Positions 523 through 55,881 of a stretch of 64,000 nucleotides of DNA are shown here, piece by piece (within the stretch, counting starts at the first letter, position 1; every line of letters starts with the position of its first letter). The stretch lies in IMG/VR virus record IMGVR_UViG_3300025770_001492, positions 124,001 through 188,000 of that record; one strand, given 5' to 3'. A program made the translations under genes and the position numbers. The notes beneath the pieces are model-generated. The model worked only from the letters and a program-made list of their open reading frames with translations, ran no database searches and was not told the DNA's origin.

Positions 523-801
523 ATGGGACGTAAAAAAACGCTAATCAACAAGAAAAACAAGAAAAGATTAGAAAGCTGTGCTTTTTGCGAATGTGCAGAC
601 TATGAAATTTTAGATGTCCACAGAATAAACGAAGGAGCAGACGGAGGAAGATATACCAGTCACAACTCCTTGACTGTCTGTGCAAACTGCCATCGGAAAA
701 TTCATTCTGGAAAAATAAAAACATTCAGAAAGCATCTAAGCACTGGCGGATATGTCCTTCATTGTGAAATCGAAGGACAAGAACAGTTTTTGAAACTATG
801 A
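523..801 (+). CDS. HNH endonuclease
   Basis: CAFC...LDVHRI..GADGG...N...VCANCHRKIH. Confidence 0.85.
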   Translation: MGRKKTLINKKNKKRLESCAFCECADYEILDVHRINEGADGGRYTSHNSLTVCANCHRKIHSGKIKTFRKHLSTGGYVLHCEIEGQEQFLKL

Positions 802-19052: not shown

Positions 19053-19168
19053 AACTCACAGAGTCGGGAATCGAACCCGAATTAGGGAATGACCCTTTAC
19101 AGATCCACTATCGACGCTCGTGCCACACGATATAGGGTATTGAACCTTACACGCCGCATCTGTGAGCC
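19053..19168 (-). ncRNA. candidate tRNA-like RNA with closing stem and two T-loops
   Basis: CTCACAGA/TCTGTGAG closing stem, T-arm TCGGG-TTCGATT-CCCGA, second GG-TTCAATA-CC hairpin, U-run after the 3' end. Confidence 0.55.
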
Positions 19169-51510: not shown

Positions 51511-52083
51511 TTAGTTCTTGTCTCGATTTCCATTCACCTCTAGATCCTCTAGTTTTAAAAGCGGTTGCCAAGGGACGCCACGTTGAGCTAGTAGCTTTTC
51601 CGCACCCTCTTGTCTGTCAATGATGGTGATCGCTTTAATCACCTCGGCACCAAAGTCGCTAATCTTATCAAAGGCATCTGCCAGTGTCTCTCCACTAGCT
51701 GCTACGTCGTCTACTAAGATTACTTTGTCCTTTGGTTGCACTGTTCCAAGGGGCTTGTCTTCGCCTTTTCTAATAAGAAAAGCTCGCAAGTCTTTTCCTA
51801 CTCGTCCTTGATTATAGCAAAATGCTCCAACGATTGGCGCAGAACCTAAACTAGGACCACCAATTGCATCAAATTCAGTTCTAAATGTTCTTCCGACATC
51901 TGTCATATACAGGACGCCCCACATGGCTTTAACTATTTCAAACACTCCCTCAGCCGATAAGGTTAACTTTTTGCAGTCAAAATAAAAATTTGTTTCATCT
52001 CCGTTTGGAAGAGTGAAATCTCCGTATTCTAAAGCATGTTTTTTAACAGCCTGTATTAAACTGTCTTTTTCTTTATTCTTCAT
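51511..52083 (-). CDS. pyrE: orotate phosphoribosyltransferase
   Basis: GDFTL..G....YFDCK, IGGPSLG, RK, VILVDDV..SG, IIDRQEG. Confidence 0.85.
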   Translation of the reverse strand: MKNKEKDSLIQAVKKHALEYGDFTLPNGDETNFYFDCKKLTLSAEGVFEIVKAMWGVLYMTDVGRTFRTEFDAIGGPSLGSAPIVGAFCYNQGRVGKDLRAFLIRKGEDKPLGTVQPKDKVILVDDVAASGETLADAFDKISDFGAEVIKAITIIDRQEGAEKLLAQRGVPWQPLLKLEDLEVNGNRDKN

Positions 52084-52510
52084 TGTTTTTCCTCATTTTA
52101 GCTACAACTGATTTGACTATGTCTCCCTCAACCGGAGCACCCTGTTGCTTCAGTTTTTGCATCGCCATCCCCATTGCTTGACCTTCAGATTTAACGCTCG
52201 AAAAATTTAACCCTTCTTTGAGTATGAACTCTTCAACCTGATCCGCTGACCAATATTGAGGCAACAAGGAGTTTAAAGCCTCGTTTTCCTTGTTTAAACG
52301 AGTAAACCTTTCGTCATCTTGAGATAAATGAGCCAAACATTCATCGTTCGATTTGATGAGCTTCTTCACTATGTTGTGGCCACGATCATCCGTCAAAGCT
52401 TTCATCTCTTGCTGACATTCGCCTAAAACACAGCGAAAAATGTCTTTTTCAACTGATCTGAAGGGTGCTTTGTTTAATGCTTCTTTTAACTTTGTTTCAA
52501 AATTCATCAT
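52073..52510 (-). CDS. GatB/YqeY domain protein
   Basis: LKEAL..R..LGE..KKLIK...E...L..LLPQ...G.AMG..M. Confidence 0.75.
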   Translation of the reverse strand: MMNFETKLKEALNKAPFRSVEKDIFRCVLGECQQEMKALTDDRGHNIVKKLIKSNDECLAHLSQDDERFTRLNKENEALNSLLPQYWSADQVEEFILKEGLNFSSVKSEGQAMGMAMQKLKQQGAPVEGDIVKSVVAKMRKNNEE

Positions 52511-52842
52511 TTTTTACTTTCTTCCTTAATTCCTTCAAATACATTTCCCACGACAAATTTTGAGATTTGTTTATAAAGTGGAATATTGCCGAACCAAAAA
52601 CAACCACTTCTATACTCAATCTCGTATTTAAGATGACTATATGATTCGTCCAATGACGGAACACACAAATCACCCTCATAAACATCTACACCATTTTGAT
52701 CTTTGAGTCCTGTGTATCGCTGGAGATGTATATCATTGTCGTAGTTGTGATGACATTGATTTTCCTCAAACCAATACAGGTCGTCAATCATTTCCATTTC
52801 TTTTCGACGTGTATTCCACGCCCTGAATTTAATCTCTCTCAT
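52507..52842 (-). CDS. YopX family protein
   Basis: MREIKFRAW, YTGLKD.NG..YEGD, VVGNVFE. Confidence 0.88.
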   Translation of the reverse strand: MREIKFRAWNTRRKEMEMIDDLYWFEENQCHHNYDNDIHLQRYTGLKDQNGVDVYEGDLCVPSLDESYSHLKYEIEYRSGCFWFGNIPLYKQISKFVVGNVFEGIKEESKK

Positions 52843-53108
52843 ACCGATTCAGCCCTTATGTAATTTATATTTTCAATCAAATGACTCGTGACTCGTTTGG
52901 AATATTCCAAATATTGTCGTTCAAATTCTTTAAGATCTTTACAAGATAGGTAAACAGGAAGTCGATTTGGTTCGTCAACTCCACCAAATGGAATTCGCCA
53001 TTTAGCCGTGCCTTCATAATCGATGTTCATATTTCCATTGAGGTAATCACGTAAAGTGATTTCCTCGTTTTCATGAATGTAAACGAACTCTTCAAGCGGC
53101 ATTTTCAT
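52839..53108 (-). CDS. hypothetical protein
   Basis: GAGG RBS. Confidence 0.65.
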   Translation of the reverse strand: MKMPLEEFVYIHENEEITLRDYLNGNMNIDYEGTAKWRIPFGGVDEPNRLPVYLSCKDLKEFERQYLEYSKRVTSHLIENINYIRAESV

Positions 53109-53127
53109 ATAGAATTCCTCTGTGTAT

Positions 53128-53183
53128 AAAAAAAGCCAGAAGCATTATCCTACTAAGTAGGACTTGATCTTTGCTTCTGACTT
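53128..53183 (-). terminator. terminator after tRNA pair
   Basis: CAGAAGCA/TGCTTCTG stem with inner CCTACT/AGTAGG and U-tract on -. Confidence 0.55.
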
Positions 53184-53186
53184 CAG

Positions 53187-53260
53187 TAGGGCCGACTGGA
53201 CTCGAACCAGTAACCGCCGGTTTATGAGACCGGTGAACTAACCAATTGTTCTACAGCCCC
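53187..53260 (-). tRNA. tRNA with CAT anticodon (elongator Met or Ile2); CCA not encoded
   Basis: GGGGCTG/CGGCCCT acceptor, CCGGT-CTCATAA-ACCGG anticodon arm, ACTGG-TTCGAGT-CCAGT T-arm. Confidence 0.92.
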
Positions 53261-53366
53261 GTGTGGGTGTCATCATACCGATTCTTGTTCTGCTTGTAAA
53301 GTGTTTTCTGATAAGATCAGGTCCCACTTTGTTTTATAAAGATCTTCAATCAAAAAATTAAGATAG

Positions 53367-53637
53367 TAGGAACGGCGGGACTCGAACCCGCACTGGATGG
53401 ATTTTCTTACTACTACAACTTTCGTTGCCATTTCTGTTTGTAGTCTGGACTTTATCTTCACCATGTCTTTCGATTTAGGTGGAACCCGTCAAGTCTCTAC
53501 ACCACTCCCAAAAAGGGTTCGGCTCGGTATTGCCATTTTACAGGTTTCACCGAATTTGGGTTCTCCACTTTATACGTTTCCGCATAAAGGCTCAAATTAC
53601 TCAAGTCCATTGACTCTGCCAATTGGTCTACGTTCCC
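53367..53637 (-). tRNA. trnL: tRNA-Leu(UAA), intron-split (exons 53603..53637 and 53367..53405)
   Basis: GGGAACG/CGTTCCT acceptor; spliced anticodon arm ATGGA-CTT^AAAA-TCCAT; GCGGG-TTCGAGT-CCCGC. Confidence 0.9.
53406..53602 (-). mobile_element. group I (IC3-like) intron, 197 nt, no homing ORF
   Basis: P1 with U.G, P AATTCGGTGAAA, Q AATACCGAGC, R GTGTAGAGACTTGACGG, S AAGATAAAGTCC, terminal G. Confidence 0.92.
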
Positions 53638-53641
53638 TCTT

Positions 53642-53797
53642 TTACTTTTTGCCTACTTCGTCTCTTTCGTGAGACCAAGTAGGATAACCAACCTTCTCAA
53701 AGACTACGCTTTGAGAAGTTTTCAACCATTTTTTGTATATCAAAATTCCATTGTGATATACAAAGAGTTGATCGTCTTTTATTTCTTTATAGATCAT
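53642..53797 (-). CDS. 51-aa protein not in the ORF track
   Basis: MIYKEIKDDQLFVYHNGILIYKKWLKTSQSVVFEK...; ATG directly after the rmlC stop. Confidence 0.6.
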   Translation of the reverse strand: MIYKEIKDDQLFVYHNGILIYKKWLKTSQSVVFEKVGYPTWSHERDEVGKK

Positions 53798-54256
53798 CTA
53801 ATCAATCTTAAATTTTGATTCATTTTCGTGTTCATGCCGAATTTCATCTACTGGGTATTTTTTACCTGGACCGGCATATAATTGGTTTGGCGCATTGAAT
53901 ACCAAGCCATCATTTTCAGAAACACATTTATAGCCATGCACTACGCCTGGCGGAACGATAACACTAATAGGATTTGACTCTCCCACCAAGTGAACTTCAT
54001 AAAACCCACTAGATCTATTATCCCAAAGATGCAATTCAAAATCGCCAGGACCTACGAAACAAAATAGATCTGTTTGATAATGATGTTCGTGGGGTCCACG
54101 AGTTACATTTGGTTTTGTCCAGCTAATGTACGCCATTACTGGTTGGTGTAAAGTTTTGAGTTCATCATCCCGAAACAATTCAAACAGAAAACCTCTGTTA
54201 TCTTCATTTTTAGGAATTGAATTGATGACTACTCCGTAAATTTTTGTTTCATTCAT
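53798..54256 (-). CDS. rmlC: dTDP-4-dehydrorhamnose 3,5-epimerase-like cupin
   Basis: DNRGFLFELFR, RGPHEH..QTD, VPPGVVHGY. Confidence 0.82.
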   Translation of the reverse strand: MNETKIYGVVINSIPKNEDNRGFLFELFRDDELKTLHQPVMAYISWTKPNVTRGPHEHHYQTDLFCFVGPGDFELHLWDNRSSGFYEVHLVGESNPISVIVPPGVVHGYKCVSENDGLVFNAPNQLYAGPGKKYPVDEIRHEHENESKFKID

Positions 54257-54672
54257 ATTTTGAAATATCTCTTTGTTCTTTCGATAAATTCTTCCATTGG
54301 ATTTTCAAGAGTTTTTGGGACTGGACGACCGGCCACTGACATATCCAGCATCATGTCCTCTGGGATTGCTCGCTCAAGGGCGTATCGTTGGCCGACTTTT
54401 GAGTAGAACTTTTCACTTTTTCGGCAAAGTGCCCACCCAATTCGCACTTTACCGTCTTTTCCACGGTAAGCGGCCAATACTCCAACGGGAGCAGATTTTC
54501 CAATCTTTACAGAAAACCCATTTTTCGTTTCAGTTAAACAAACTGGTGTGGGTCCTTTTCGAACATATTTAATGATGACATCCGTTTCGTTTCGAAAGGA
54601 TTTACACCAATCATTACATTCTTGAACGAAGTCTTGCTTGCTTCGAATTTTCTTTTCGATAGTCAAAGTCAT
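54253..54672 (-). CDS. hypothetical phage protein
   Basis: AGGAG RBS; IGWALC..E.F...G...ALER. Confidence 0.7.
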   Translation of the reverse strand: MTLTIEKKIRSKQDFVQECNDWCKSFRNETDVIIKYVRKGPTPVCLTETKNGFSVKIGKSAPVGVLAAYRGKDGKVRIGWALCRKSEKFYSKVGQRYALERAIPEDMMLDMSVAGRPVPKTLENPMEEFIERTKRYFKI

Positions 54673-54707
54673 TTCAATATCTCCTAAAAGGTTTTAGTGC
54701 CTTTGAA

Positions 54708-54908
54708 TCAGACACGAACGTACCTGAAATTGTTATCCTCTAGAACTATACCGTTGATTTCTGCGATGTAAAGTATTCCTTCGAGAGAAACTTCTAGTTG
54801 TGCAGCATCAATAATAGATTCTGCTTCTTCTTCGTCCAAATCACCACCACAGACGAGATTTGCAACGATTCGATTGAGTTTATTCCACGCTTCATCTCTA
54901 GTCATCAT
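54708..54908 (-). CDS. hypothetical protein
   Basis: GGAG RBS. Confidence 0.6.
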   Translation of the reverse strand: MMTRDEAWNKLNRIVANLVCGGDLDEEEAESIIDAAQLEVSLEGILYIAEINGIVLEDNNFRYVRV

Positions 54909-54924
54909 ACAACTCCATCCAGTT

Positions 54925-55146
54925 TCATGTCATTCTAAAGTAATCTTCTAATTCAACCAACGCTGCTCGGATTTCTGAAGCCCGGTCAAGCTTGAAATAC
55001 TGGTCACCGATTGAAGTCCTTCTTAATACTTTGATGCAGATTGCCTCTAGTTGTTCATTTTTATCGGTCAGTCGCTTGATCTCCTCATCTTTGATTTCAA
55101 GCTGTTTGTCGAGCCATTGCTTCATTATCCATATTGAGTCATTCAC
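54925..55146 (-). CDS. hypothetical coiled-coil protein
   Basis: Overlapping operon arrangement. Confidence 0.55.
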   Translation of the reverse strand: MNDSIWIMKQWLDKQLEIKDEEIKRLTDKNEQLEAICIKVLRRTSIGDQYFKLDRASEIRAALVELEDYFRMT

Positions 55147-55324
55147 AGTTGCACATCCTTATTTTGTTTCTCATCCTCAAAATCACATCTGCCAGAAAAC
55201 AGCTTTCACAAATATGACCAACACTAGAATCACAAAATTCACATTCTTCAGTTCCATCAGAGCATTCTTTTTCCTCTGTTTTTAGGAGTTCCAATGCTGT
55301 TTGGATATCTTCATCAAGTGTCAC
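55139..55324 (-). CDS. small CxxC...CxxC protein
   Basis: CEFC...CESC; coupled to the upstream gene. Confidence 0.55.
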   Translation of the reverse strand: MTLDEDIQTALELLKTEEKECSDGTEECEFCDSSVGHICESCFLADVILRMRNKIRMCNCE

Positions 55325-55881
55325 TTGTATTTCCTGTATATCGCACTATTGTCGTTCCAGAGTGGGTCGCTTTCGTCGATATACGATTCGACTAAAGAGA
55401 TTTTATGCTCGTTTTTGTTTGCCCATTTTTCAAGCCCGCTCCAAGAGTCTTTTAAAAACCTCCAACAATCGGTCGGATATCCATGATACGGACCAGTGGA
55501 AGGAGCTTGGATATAAATTAATCCATCTTTTTTCAAAACTCTGCATATTTCTAAGAATGTAACCCAAAACATATCATCATGTTCAAAGCAGGAAGATGAT
55601 ATTATTATATCAAAAGATTCATCGCTGAATGGCATTTCATGCGCCGACCCAACCACATCGACGTTTCTGCCTGAATCTTGGTCTAACCCTATATATTCCT
55701 TAACCGGAACGCCACCGTCAGCAGGATTCCAGCGGCTAGGATCAATGAATATAGGTCGCATGTTAAACCCCTGAATATCCAGAGAACCCACGTCCAGAAC
55801 TGATTTGCCCTCTAACAGCGGATCATTCTTGCAATATTTTTCATAGAACATCAAAACGTTTTTCAGTGCAGATTTGTGCAT
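55321..55881 (-). CDS. class I SAM methyltransferase
   Basis: VLDVGS, YIGLD, FDIIISSSCFEHD, RVLK..G, YHGYP.DCWRF. Confidence 0.88.
   Translation of the reverse strand: MHKSALKNVLMFYEKYCKNDPLLEGKSVLDVGSLDIQGFNMRPIFIDPSRWNPADGGVPVKEYIGLDQDSGRNVDVVGSAHEMPFSDESFDIIISSSCFEHDDMFWVTFLEICRVLKKDGLIYIQAPSTGPYHGYPTDCWRFLKDSWSGLEKWANKNEHKISLVESYIDESDPLWNDNSAIYRKYK

What the first reader, a model, noticed from the sequence alone, without database searches (positions are those of the whole stretch)
53367..53637. Phage tRNA-Leu(UAA) carrying a 197-nt group I intron
Seen: an intron inserted between U34 and A35 with P/Q/R/S elements and P1 resembling the cyanobacterial/plastid trnL(UAA) IC3 intron, very compact and with no endonuclease ORF. 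Known: this position is the classic trnL intron site. Inference: phages may spread tRNA introns, and the unspliced precursor lacks an intact anticodon loop, which could shield it from anticodon nucleases.
Basis: partly seen in the sequence, partly recalled or inferred. Interest (0 to 1): 0.6.

Follow-up and report, generated by a model that had tools for sequence, protein, structure and literature searches.

The report
Self-splicing intron inside a phage tRNA-Leu gene
A large marine phage carries a leucine tRNA gene split in its anticodon by a compact self-splicing (group I) intron, which the 2014 review I read said had not been seen in phage tRNA genes, and the tRNA lacks the long extra arm that cellular leucine tRNAs have.

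Summary
On the minus strand, window 53637-53367 encodes a tRNA with anticodon UAA, interrupted between U34 and A35 by a 197-nt ORF-less group I intron (53602-53406). ARAGORN in intron mode and Rfam RF00028 (57.7 bits, cut-off 50) both find it.

In 28 distinct phage homologues, cloverleaf plus P1-P9 are 98% paired, and 41 of 72 pairs show compensatory changes.

- The tRNA is class-I shaped, with a 5-nt variable loop. It keeps a leucine-type D arm, A73, U8:A14 and A15:U48.
- This short form with the intron occurs in 36 IMG/VR contigs and in none of 185,579 bacterial and archaeal species genomes. All 112 sampled bacterial intron-bearing tRNA-Leu(UAA) genes have long arms.

Nearly identical introns (up to 97%) sit in phage tRNA genes whose exons are only 63-69% identical. 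Longer siblings encode HNH endonucleases. So the intron moves among phage tRNA genes.

A cultured jumbo phage, Agrobacterium phage Atu_ph07, has an unannotated homologue.

Splicing itself was not shown: the metatranscriptome contigs did not cover the tRNA.

I found no published report of a group I intron in a phage tRNA gene. A 2014 review states that none was known.

The parts
53603..53637 (-). 5' exon of the tRNA (35 nt). It holds the acceptor 5' strand, U8 A9, a 3-bp D stem with the AAUUGGCAG-type D loop, the anticodon-stem 5' strand, and C32 U33 U34. U34 is at 53603.
   Evidence: ARAGORN -i. Compensatory changes in the acceptor and D stems.
53406..53602 (-). Group I intron, 197 nt, with no ORF. 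It begins GAGUAAUUUGAGCC and ends GUAGUAAG.
   Evidence: RF00028 57.7 bits. ARAGORN intron call. Fold z = -3.06. Covariation.
53367..53405 (-). 3' exon (39 nt). It holds A35 A36 A37 A38, the anticodon-stem 3' strand, the 5-nt variable loop CCAGU, the T arm, the acceptor 3' strand and discriminator A73 (53367). No CCA is encoded.
   Evidence: ARAGORN. A73 in 28/28 and A15:U48 in 23/28 homologues.
53591..53593 (-). Internal guide (intron G10 A11 G12). It pairs with exon C32 U33 U34 to form P1, with the U34.G10 wobble at the 5' splice site.
   Evidence: Read from the sequence. The three pairs are invariant in 28/28 homologues.
53568..53589 (-). P2 hairpin (9 bp, GAAA loop).
   Evidence: All 7 scored P2 pairs show compensatory changes. 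Present in the MFE fold.
53501..53553 (-). P4-P5-P6-P6a domain (intron 50-102).
   Evidence: RNAalifold. P5 pair GC:15/CG:11.
53482..53497 (-). P7 5' strand (intron 106, 108-111, with A107 bulged), J7/3, and the P3 3' strand (116-121). The P3 5' strand is at 53558-53563.
   Evidence: Rfam alignment. P3 has 4 pairs with compensatory changes. P7 is invariant, so it says nothing either way.
53459..53481 (-). P8 hairpin (GAAA loop).
   Evidence: 100% paired; 4 of 6 pairs show compensatory changes.
53447..53451 (-). P7 3' strand (AGUCC).
   Evidence: Rfam alignment. Invariant in the family, partly because the search pattern required it.
53406..53444 (-). P9 (intron 159-163 with 190-194), the P9a hairpin (175-188, GAAA loop), and the terminal G (omega G) at 53406.
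   Evidence: P9 pair CG:14/UA:14. All 5 P9a pairs are compensatory.
53186..53260 (-). Neighbouring tRNA-Met(CAU), 106 nt downstream on the same strand. Probably co-transcribed.
   Evidence: ARAGORN and Rfam tRNA, 67.1 bits.

Best explanation
This is a working phage tRNA gene interrupted by a selfish, self-splicing group I intron of the trnL(UAA) (IC3-like) family.

Proposed mechanism:
1. The minus strand is transcribed, probably together with the tRNA-Met that follows.
2. In the precursor the two exons are held together by the 5-bp anticodon stem.
3. C32-U33-U34 pair with the intron's guide GAG (U34.G wobble) to form a short P1.
4. The core (P3-P8, with the P3/P7 pseudoknot, plus P2 and P9/P9a with GAAA loops) folds.
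5. A free guanosine attacks after U34. The freed U34 3'-OH then attacks after the intron's last G, which joins U34 to A35.
6. The host trims the ends and adds CCA.

The product is a 73-nt tRNA (75-76 nt with CCA) with anticodon UAA. It is class-I shaped (5-nt variable loop) but keeps the bacterial leucine identity set, so host LeuRS most likely charges it. It would read UUA/UUG, which make up half of the phage's leucine codons.

The intron brings no known benefit. It persists because it splices, and it spreads among phage tRNA(UAA) genes through the shared anticodon stem-loop target, helped by HNH homing endonucleases that sibling introns encode. This copy has no endonuclease gene.

Shown: sequence anatomy, family membership, covariation, distribution, and the mismatch between intron and exon similarity. 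Inferred: splicing itself, leucylation, and the homing mechanism.
For: - Detection: ARAGORN intron mode and RF00028 above its cut-off.
- The junction is unambiguous. Removing exactly 197 nt gives GGACUU|AAAAUCC, the sequence of natural intron-less genes in at least 119 viral contigs. The same is seen in DNA contigs from the same seawater samples. U precedes the 5' splice site and pairs with G, and the intron ends in G.
- Structure: across 28 distinct homologues, 98.1% of cells are paired, against 31-40% when partners are slid. 41 of 72 pairs have compensatory changes. The covariation score is 0.410 against 0.140 in shuffles. RNAalifold finds the same helices unaided. Every proposed pair is canonical in the window copy.
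- Leucine identity: A73 28/28, U8:A14 28/28, A15:U48 23/28. The D stem is 3 bp with a 10-12-nt loop, as in Leu/Ser/Tyr tRNAs and unlike class I tRNAs from the same loci. The 5' half matches long-arm tRNA-Leu(UAA). E. coli LeuRS needs A73, A15-U48, G18G19 and A20a, but not the long arm (PMC9976931).
- Demand: TTA plus TTG make up 50.5% of Leu codons in 149 long ORFs.
- Mobility: short-arm and long-arm pairs with 87-97% identical introns but 57-75% identical exons. Short- and long-arm hosts are interleaved in the intron tree. Long sibling introns hold HNH ORFs.
- It is real phage DNA: the same 272 nt occur in three more IMG/VR contigs, and the locus is held by runs from at least 15 studies.
Against: - No RNA evidence of splicing. 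The two metatranscriptome runs that hold part of the stretch cover only upstream ORFs, and contigs cannot show a tRNA.
- P1 and P7 never vary in the family, so they are neither supported nor refuted by covariation. Part of that invariance was imposed by my search pattern.
- The RF00028 score is only modestly above its cut-off.
- A tRNA-Leu without a long arm is unknown in cells outside animal mitochondria (PMC9976931), so charging by a bacterial LeuRS is an inference from E. coli work.
- G1.U72 (27/28 homologues) is unexplained.
- The host is unknown.
- The window copy sits on a long branch of the intron tree.
Confidence: 0.8

Rival explanations
1. The intron has been kept because it helps the phage. 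One version is the reader's idea that an unspliced precursor pool escapes host anticodon nucleases. Another is that splicing, which depends on GTP, Mg2+ or folding, times the supply of tRNA-Leu. The loss of the long variable arm could likewise be an escape from nucleases that cut variable arms.
For: - The phage encodes a T4 Rnl1-type RNA ligase, the kind of enzyme T4 uses to mend anticodon-nuclease damage (my own knowledge).
- A host defence that cuts a class II variable loop is documented: Septu on tRNA-Tyr (abstract of PMC13096335).
- ORF-less introns persist in many phage lineages.
- The short-arm tRNA appears only in viral sequence in the collections I searched.
Against: - No data link the intron to defence.
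So the intron is dispensable.
- Only spliced tRNA decodes, and it has a normal anticodon loop.
- The patchy, exon-incongruent distribution and the HNH-bearing siblings are the signature of a selfish element.
Confidence: 0.1
2. The gene is a relic. The intron no longer splices, or splices poorly, and the tRNA is not used.
For: - No RNA evidence.
- No endonuclease gene.
- Long terminal branch for the window copy.
- Some phages carry both an intron-less and an intron-bearing tRNA-Leu(UAA), for example L086, so a dead copy could be tolerated.
Against: - All 74 proposed pairs of the first structure are canonical in the window copy.
- The conserved core columns are intact.
- Compensatory changes across the family show selection on both the tRNA and the ribozyme folds.
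- It is the only tRNA-Leu found in the 245 kb held.
Confidence: 0.07
3. The spliced RNA is not a leucine tRNA. Because it is class-I shaped, another synthetase charges it, or it acts as a decoy or regulator rather than an adaptor.
For: - Cellular tRNA-Leu always has a long arm outside animal mitochondria (PMC9976931).
- G1.U72 is conserved in 27/28 homologues and is not part of the known leucine set.
Against: - A73, A15:U48, U8:A14, G18G19 and a leucine-type D arm are conserved.
- E. coli LeuRS ignores the anticodon and the long arm.
- There is no G3.U70 or other obvious foreign identity mark (read from the sequence).
- Curators of cultured phages annotate the intron-less form as tRNA-Leu, though by anticodon only.
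Confidence: 0.07
4. It is bacterial DNA, or a chimeric assembly, wrongly placed in a phage contig.
For: The record is a metagenome assembly rated about 49% complete.
Against: - One DNA contig of 5,780 nt spans the whole 1.5 kb laid with no differences.
- Runs from at least 15 studies hold it.
- Flanking genes are phage-like: UvsX-like recombinase, DnaB-like and other helicases, SbcCD-like nuclease, YopX.
- The short-arm form was found in none of 185,579 bacterial and archaeal species genomes.
Confidence: 0.01

Closest known systems
[quoted passage not shown]
   Same: - Same insertion site (U34|A35).
- Same short P1 built on the anticodon loop, with the anticodon stem holding the exons.
- Same core sequences (AAAUUCGG..., ACCGAGCC, GUAGAGACU.GACGG, AGUCCAGAC).
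- No ORF.
- It aligns and trees with at least 86 distinct bacterial examples.
   Different: - It is in a phage.
- It is shorter: 197 nt, against a bacterial median of 223.5.
- It is only 63% identical to a cyanobacterial copy and at most 73% to any bacterial one.
- Its host tRNA lacks the long variable arm that all 112 sampled bacterial hosts have.
Azoarcus tRNA-Ile(CAU) and other small IC3 pre-tRNA introns (recalled from memory, not tested here)
   Same: About 200 nt. Has P2, P9 and P9.0-like pairing next to the terminal G, GAAA tetraloops, and no P5abc extension.
   Different: A different tRNA and anticodon position. I held no reference sequence, so I made no direct comparison.
Group I introns of phage protein genes (T4 td, nrdB and nrdD; SPO1 and Twort; Bastillevirinae, PMC11878797)
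   Same: - Phage-borne, self-splicing, and often partnered with HNH or GIY-YIG homing endonucleases.
- This same phage has one in its DnaE-like gene.
- The pelagiphage HTVC120P and Chosvirus capsid-gene introns share up to 83% identity with this intron's core.
   Different: Those interrupt ORFs. This one interrupts a tRNA. [quoted passage not shown]
Animal mitochondrial tRNA-Leu(UUR)
   Same: A leucine tRNA with anticodon UAA and no long variable arm, recognised through A73 and A14 (PMC9976931).
   Different: Unrelated lineage, no intron, and a reduced mitochondrial fold. The phage tRNA has a full canonical D and T arm.
Introns reported in Lak megaphage and jumbo-phage tRNAs (PMC8346664, PMC13037316)
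   Same: tRNA genes of very large phages that standard bacterial tRNA finders miss because they are interrupted.
   Different: Those were called by tRNAscan-SE in eukaryotic mode and are not described as group I ribozymes. No ribozyme core is claimed there.

Membership tests
Group I intron (Rfam RF00028) | Covariance-model score at or above the curated cut-off (50 bits) | tested here: met
   57.7 bits, model positions 1-253, E 6e-14. The whole-genome search gives the same score. The 64-kb gathering run missed it.
Group I intron (Rfam RF00028) | Conserved core helices P3-P8, including the P3/P7 pseudoknot | tested here: met
   P3, P4, P5, P6, P6a and P8 are 93-100% paired with compensatory changes. 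P7 is 100% paired but invariant.
Group I intron (Rfam RF00028) | U at the end of the 5' exon in a U.G wobble within P1, and G as the last intron base | tested here: met
   U34 (53603) pairs with intron G10. The last intron base is G197 (53406). Read. Invariant in 28/28 homologues.
Group I intron (Rfam RF00028) | Guanosine-dependent self-splicing | not testable with these tools
   Needs an in vitro or in vivo RNA assay. The metatranscriptome contigs did not cover the tRNA.
trnL(UAA) pre-tRNA intron family (IC3 type) | Inserted between U34 and A35 of a tRNA with anticodon UAA | tested here: met
   ARAGORN gives 'gactt-Intron-aaaat'. The junction cannot slide, and the result matches natural intron-less genes.
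trnL(UAA) pre-tRNA intron family (IC3 type) | Sequence homology to bona fide bacterial trnL(UAA) introns | tested here: met
   62.6-73.1% identity to bacterial copies, alignable over the full length, in one tree with them.
trnL(UAA) pre-tRNA intron family (IC3 type) | Formal IC3 subgroup assignment | not tested
   No subgroup-specific models were on hand. The architecture (P2, no P5abc, P9 with P9.0-like pairing) fits IC3 as I recall it.
Bacterial-type tRNA-Leu (class II) | Long variable arm (10 nt or more) | tested here: not met
   The variable loop is 5 nt (CCAGU). 36 phage homologues share this, and 0 of 112 bacterial ones do.
Bacterial-type tRNA-Leu (class II) | Leucine identity set defined for E. 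coli LeuRS: A73, A15:U48, G18G19 with A20a in a long D loop, U8:A14 | tested here: met
   Present in the window tRNA. A73 28/28, U8:A14 28/28, A15:U48 23/28. Leucine-type 3-bp D stem with a 10-12-nt loop. The identity set is taken from PMC9976931.
Bacterial-type tRNA-Leu (class II) | Charged with leucine | not testable with these tools
   Needs an aminoacylation assay.
Mobile (homing) group I intron | Homing endonuclease gene inside the intron | tested here: not met
   The intron is 197 nt with no sense ORF. Siblings of 596-809 nt in phage tRNA-Leu genes do encode HNH proteins. L044, L065 and L098 score above the Pfam cut-off.
Mobile (homing) group I intron | Intron phylogeny at odds with host-gene phylogeny, and presence/absence polymorphism | tested here: met
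   Introns 87-97% identical in exons 57-75% identical. The tree needs 12-13 switches between short- and long-arm hosts, of which at least 7 are forced by well-supported branches. Intron-less alleles are common.

The most novel reading that the evidence does not exclude
Phages maintain their own class-I-shaped tRNA-Leu lineage, absent from the cellular genomes searched. In this reading, both its missing variable arm and the ribozyme in its anticodon loop are adaptations against host tRNA-targeting defences (variable-arm or anticodon-loop nucleases). The intron-bearing precursor would serve as a nuclease-proof reserve that splices into fresh tRNA during infection.
Probability: 0.08. Interest if true: 0.85.

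Novelty: new variant of a known kind. Interest (0 to 1): 0.6.

Why it matters
Group I introns were known in bacterial and plastid tRNA genes, and in phage protein genes. The 2014 field review stressed that they had not been found in phage tRNA genes, despite the many tRNAs phages carry. This locus and its relatives fill that gap: more than 110 IMG/VR contigs, three GenBank records of huge phages (LR756501, LR756503, LR756511) and the cultured phage Atu_ph07.

They also show the intron moving between structurally different tRNA genes that share little beyond the anticodon stem-loop. That makes phages plausible carriers of the trnL intron between hosts.

Two further points follow.
- A class-I-shaped tRNA-Leu is common in phages (annotated in P-SSM7, P-RSM6, and phages of Streptomyces, Lactobacillus, Pseudomonas and Vibrio). 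It was not found in the cellular genomes searched. This contradicts the textbook rule that tRNA-Leu always has a long arm outside animal mitochondria.
- Standard phage annotation misses these genes or overlays them with spurious ORFs, so phage tRNA counts are too low.

Atu_ph07 on Agrobacterium tumefaciens C58 offers a laboratory system for direct tests.

Tried and rejected
- **RNA evidence.** One run search and one read-laying run. Two marine metatranscriptome runs held 10-15% of the sampled words, but their contigs lie on upstream ORFs (53682-54222) and on short conserved bits from other organisms. No joint was seen. This is inconclusive, not negative.
- **Exon-exon junction search.** Exons were handled separately and by reference. 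Natural intron-less genes (for example L244:3527-3601) stood in for the spliced form. In one search the two short exon strings were typed separately into a script to score halves.
- **Synteny test for intron presence or absence in close relatives.** The neighbouring 152-aa protein finds only the same three contigs. Helicase relatives (53-82% identity, contigs up to 532,729 b) lack the tRNA-Leu/tRNA-Met pair within 10 kb. No verdict.
- **ARAGORN artefacts rejected.**
  - 'tRNA-Thr(cgt)' with a 13-nt intron at window 19055-19165 has no Rfam support.
  - 'tRNA-Thr with a 586-nt intron' in L122 is two tRNAs flanking a free-standing HNH gene.
  - The 'tRNA-Stop(tta)', 'tRNA-Lys(ttt)' and 'tRNA-Arg(tct)' calls in L043, L065, L099, L079 and L076 are the same Leu(UAA) genes with the intron boundary misplaced.
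- **Promoter and terminator scan of 52800-54400.** Nothing above chance.
- **Antisense 91-aa ORF as a real gene.** Rejected.
- **Host identification.** UvsX has 33% identity or less to any cultured phage. The host stays unknown.
- **Literature.** Nine searches found no report of a group I intron in a phage tRNA gene. Subscription-only papers are not covered, so prior description cannot be excluded.
Full report
**1. What is there**

The feature is on the minus strand. ARAGORN in default mode finds only tRNA-Met(CAU) at 53260-53186. With introns allowed it calls a tRNA-Leu(taa) at genome positions c[177366,177637], which is window 53366-53637. The intron is 197 nt and is inserted 'gactt-Intron-aaaat', between U34 and A35.

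Rfam's group I intron model RF00028 matches 53612-53424(-) over its whole length at 57.7 bits (cut-off 50, E 6e-14). A search of the whole genome gives the same score. The 64-kb gathering run missed it, presumably because of the speed filters.

The intron alone folds better than all 200 dinucleotide shuffles (z = -3.06), and its minimum-energy fold already shows P2, P3, P4, P5, P6, P6a, P8, P9 and P9a.

The parts are:
- 5' exon: 53637-53603
- intron: 53602-53406
- 3' exon: 53405-53367

**2. Anatomy**

Numbering the intron 1-197:

| Element | Intron positions | Notes |
|---|---|---|
| P1 | G10 A11 G12 with exon C32 U33 U34 | U34.G10 wobble at the 5' splice site |
| P2 | 14-22 / 27-35 | GAAA loop |
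| P3 | 40-45 / 116-121 | |
| P4 | 50-55 / 74-79 | |
| P5 | 59-60 / 69-70 | |
| P6 | 80-82 / 100-102 | |
| P6a | 86-88 / 94-96 | |
| P7 | 106, 108-111 / 152-156 | A107 bulged |
| P8 | 122-125, 130-131 / 136-137, 141-144 | GAAA loop |
| P9 | 159-163 / 190-194 | |
| P9a | 175-179 / 184-188 | GAAA loop |
| Terminal G | 197 | |

Every pair of the first structure I proposed is canonical in the window sequence. P9 and P9a were then redrawn from the RNAalifold columns. The 5-bp anticodon stem (AUGGA/UCCAU) bridges the intron. For the Anabaena pre-tRNA intron, pairing of the exons in this stem is reported to be needed for splicing (Zaug, McEvoy and Cech 1993, title seen).

**3. Source of the window**

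The window is bases 124001-188000 of a 245,522-b IMG/VR virus record rated about 49% complete. Its genes are phage-like: UvsX-like recombinase, DnaB-like and other helicases, SbcCD-like nuclease, YopX.

UvsX has 33% identity or less to any cultured phage. Helicase relatives lie on contigs of up to 532,729 b. This is therefore an uncultured lineage of very large phages.

The DNA is marine. Runs from at least 15 seawater or marine metagenome studies hold the locus. One 5,780-nt DNA contig spans the whole 1.5 kb laid without a difference. Three further IMG/VR contigs hold the identical 272-nt precursor.

**4. Relatives and covariation**

A pattern made of the intron core plus the 3' junction finds 116 places in IMG/VR. 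ARAGORN resolves 112 of them as intron-bearing tRNA(UAA) genes.

I aligned the window with 27 distinct short-arm homologues (alignment A2). RNAalifold, unaided, recovers the acceptor, D and T stems and P2-P9a.

I then scored a full structure that adds the anticodon stem, P1 and the P3/P7 pseudoknot:
- 98.1% of cells are paired, against 31-40% when the partners are slid by 1-3 columns.
- 41 of 72 pairs show compensatory changes.
- The covariation score is 0.410, against 0.140 ± 0.007 in shuffles.

Both the tRNA and the ribozyme are therefore under selection for their folds. P1 and P7 never vary, partly because my pattern demanded the P7 strand, so they are simply uninformative.

**5. The junction**

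Removing exactly the 197 nt gives ...GGACUU|AAAAUCC.... That is the sequence of natural intron-less genes for the same tRNA in at least 119 viral contigs.

DNA contigs from the same seawater samples show the 5' exon of a related tRNA abutting the 3' exon directly (loose ends at 53405).

The boundaries cannot slide. The intron starts with G and the 3' exon with A. The intron ends with G and the 5' exon with U.

**6.

The variable loop is 5 nt (CCAGU), and the mature tRNA is 73 nt before CCA is added.

- Of the 112 viral intron-bearing genes, 36 are of this short kind (73-76 nt by ARAGORN's ends) and 76 have a normal long arm (82-89 nt).
- All 112 intron-bearing tRNA-Leu genes recovered from a sample of 120 bacterial loci are long-armed (84-91 nt).
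- A pattern specific to 'intron end plus short-arm 3' exon' has no match in one genome for each of 185,579 bacterial and archaeal species.
- The intron-less short form is absent from 401 genomes sampled from the phylum of a Rhizobium locus (Pseudomonadota by NCBI's name for it), from 301 sampled from the phylum of a Phormidesmis locus (Cyanobacteriota), and from the five genomes reached through the bacterial loci, two of them counted again in those samples.
- The intron-less short form is annotated 'tRNA-Leu' in cultured phages of very different hosts: Prochlorococcus phages P-SSM7 and P-RSM6, and phages of Streptomyces, Lactobacillus, Pseudomonas, Rhodococcus, Vibrio and Acinetobacter.

**7. 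Is it still a leucine tRNA?**

Most likely yes.

- Its 5' half aligns with long-arm tRNA-Leu(UAA), including the D arm.
- The D stem is 3 bp in 102 of 104 short forms, and the D loop is 10-12 nt. This matches Leu, Ser and Tyr tRNAs in the same phage loci. Class I tRNAs there have 4-bp stems and 7-9-nt loops.
- A73 and U8:A14 are invariant (28/28), and A15:U48 holds in 23/28.
- For E. coli LeuRS the review lists A73, the A15-U48 pair, G18G19 and A20a as decisive. It says the anticodon and long arm are not needed, and that variants lacking the long arm remain active.

Unexplained: G1.U72 in 27/28 homologues and A9 in 28/28.

TTA and TTG are the most-used leucine codons of the phage (26.0% and 24.5%, together 4.0% of all codons in 149 long ORFs; genome G+C 37.7%). 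No other tRNA-Leu is present in the 245 kb held.

**8. The intron moves**

In a tree of 153 distinct introns (window, 66 viral, 86 bacterial), viral and bacterial copies are largely separate (8 changes). Introns from short-arm and long-arm hosts are interleaved, with 12-13 changes, of which at least 7 are forced by well-supported branches.

Concrete pairs:

| Short-arm host | Long-arm host | Intron identity | Exon identity |
|---|---|---|---|
| L104 | L050 | 97.0% | 63-69% |
| L027 | L009 | 96.4% | 65-74% |
| L097 | L013 | 94.2% | 57-60% |

Sibling introns of 596-809 nt in phage tRNA-Leu genes carry HNH endonuclease ORFs. L044, L065 and L098 score above the Pfam cut-off.

The window's phage has two free-standing HNH genes, one of them at window 589-708. 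The window's own intron has no ORF. Its 91-codon antisense frame is not conserved.

The window intron's nearest relatives are viral (83.4% for L119; median 74%). The best bacterial match is 73.1% (a Methylobacter MAG), and a cyanobacterial one (Phormidesmis) is 62.6%. Viral copies are shorter, with a median of 202 nt against 223.5.

The window copy sits on a long branch, so its exact placement is unsure.

**9. Named and cultured examples**

- GenBank's huge-phage assemblies LR756501 and LR756503 (735 kb) and LR756511 carry long-arm tRNA-Leu(UAA) genes with a related intron.
- The cultured jumbo phage Agrobacterium phage Atu_ph07 (490 kb) has a long-arm tRNA-Leu(UAA) with a 278-nt intron at the same site, at NC_042013 complement 112890-113251. 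It is unannotated and partly overlaid by 'hypothetical protein' gp154. RF00028 scores 48.9 bits, just under the cut-off.
- Related intron cores also split the capsid genes of Pelagibacter phage HTVC120P and Chosvirus KM23C739.

**10. Splicing was not observed**

The two metatranscriptome runs that share words with the stretch cover only upstream ORFs. Contigs cannot show a small structured RNA.

That step is named under next steps.

**11.

I found nothing for it beyond context. The phage encodes a T4 Rnl1-type RNA ligase (PF09511, 57.7 bits, genome 80795-81457). A host defence that cuts a class II variable loop has been reported (abstract of PMC13096335).

Against an adaptive role:
- The distribution is patchy and at odds with the exons.
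- Sibling introns carry homing endonucleases.

That is the pattern of a selfish element.

**12. Literature**

Nine full-text searches found no later report of a group I intron in a phage tRNA gene. The tRNA 'introns' noted in Lak megaphages and other jumbo phages were called with a eukaryotic tRNA model and are not described as ribozymes. Papers outside the open library could not be checked.

**13. Verdict**

This is a genuine and, on comparative evidence, functional group I intron of the trnL(UAA) family, inside a phage tRNA gene. It is a known kind of element in a setting that the literature I could search does not report. Three further points stand out:
- The host tRNA is a class-I-shaped tRNA-Leu found only in viral sequence in the collections searched.
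- The intron is demonstrably mobile among phage tRNA genes.
- A cultured phage is available for testing.

Confidence that it is a splicing-competent intron in a working tRNA is 0.8. Interest is 0.6.

Noticed in passing
G000:C1:115648-115873 (-), outside the window (locus L006:1501-1726): A second, stronger group I intron in the same phage (RF00028 90.7 bits). It splits a DnaE-like DNA polymerase III alpha gene at the PHP motif ...HTDFSL|LDGY.... The downstream exon scores Pfam PHP 100.7 bits and DNA_pol3_alpha 84.7 bits. The polymerase match stops at profile position 98 of 260 and the frame ends soon after, so there may be a further interruption.
   Followed up: partly
L244:3527-3601 and at least 118 other IMG/VR loci; GenBank NC_015290 117188-117261 (P-SSM7): An intron-less, class-I-shaped (about 74-75 nt) tRNA with anticodon UAA and a leucine-type D arm is widespread in phages of unrelated hosts and is annotated tRNA-Leu. 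It was not found in the bacterial genomes searched. Phage tRNA-Leu(UAG) in the same loci is also short, with a median of 78 nt.
   Followed up: partly
NC_042013.1 complement 112890-113251 (locus L363:491-852): The cultured Agrobacterium jumbo phage Atu_ph07 has an unannotated tRNA-Leu(UAA) with a 278-nt group I intron at U34/A35. The annotated 'hypothetical protein' gp154 overlaps it.
   Followed up: yes
L124-L243 (genome contigs): The trnL(UAA) group I intron is not confined to cyanobacteria. They include Caulobacter, Sphingomonas, Rhizobium, Bradyrhizobium, Rhodobacter, many Acidobacteriota, Gammaproteobacteria, Bacteroidota and Bacilli MAGs, and one cyanobacterium in the sample. Some copies are 674-847 nt long.
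   Followed up: partly
MH598807.1 about 19.4-20.6 kb (L002); KT997847.1 about 21.7-22.8 kb (L004): The capsid genes of Pelagibacter phage HTVC120P and Chosvirus KM23C739 are annotated as two separate 'capsid protein' CDS. A group I intron related to this one lies between them (RF00028 48.6 and 78 bits).
   Followed up: partly
G000:C1:80795-81457 (+), outside the window: A T4 Rnl1-type RNA ligase domain (PF09511, 57.7 bits) in a 438-aa frame. No AAA_33 kinase and no CCA-adding enzyme domain were found in the half of the genome that is held.
   Followed up: no
window 589-708 (+); G000:C1:40144-40278 (-): Two free-standing HNH endonuclease domains in the phage (22.7 and 58.3 bits). They are candidates for endonucleases acting in trans.
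   Followed up: no
window 53397-53672 (+): A 91-codon ATG frame antisense to the whole tRNA and intron. In relatives the longest antisense frame varies from 36 to 90 codons and changes frame, so it is spurious. A gene caller would probably annotate it.
   Followed up: yes
L122:4991-5605 (+): A ROOL RNA (RF03087, 296.5 bits) next to a large tRNA cluster in an IMG/VR contig. The cluster also holds an intron-bearing tRNA-Leu(UAA) and a free-standing HNH gene between two tRNAs.
   Followed up: no
window 19055-19165 (-): ARAGORN in intron mode calls a 'tRNA-Thr(cgt)' with a 13-nt intron here. Rfam finds nothing even at E up to 1, so it is a false positive.
   Followed up: yes
window 51511-55881 (-): The genes around the tRNA pair are a phosphoribosyltransferase-like protein, a YqeY-like protein, YopX, a cupin of the dTDP-sugar epimerase type and a methyltransferase. 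No endonuclease lies next to the tRNA.
   Followed up: no
alignment A2, columns 2 and 323: G1.U72 wobble at the top of the acceptor stem in 27 of 28 short-arm phage tRNA(UAA) genes, and A9 in 28 of 28. These are not part of the known leucine identity set and are unexplained.
   Followed up: no
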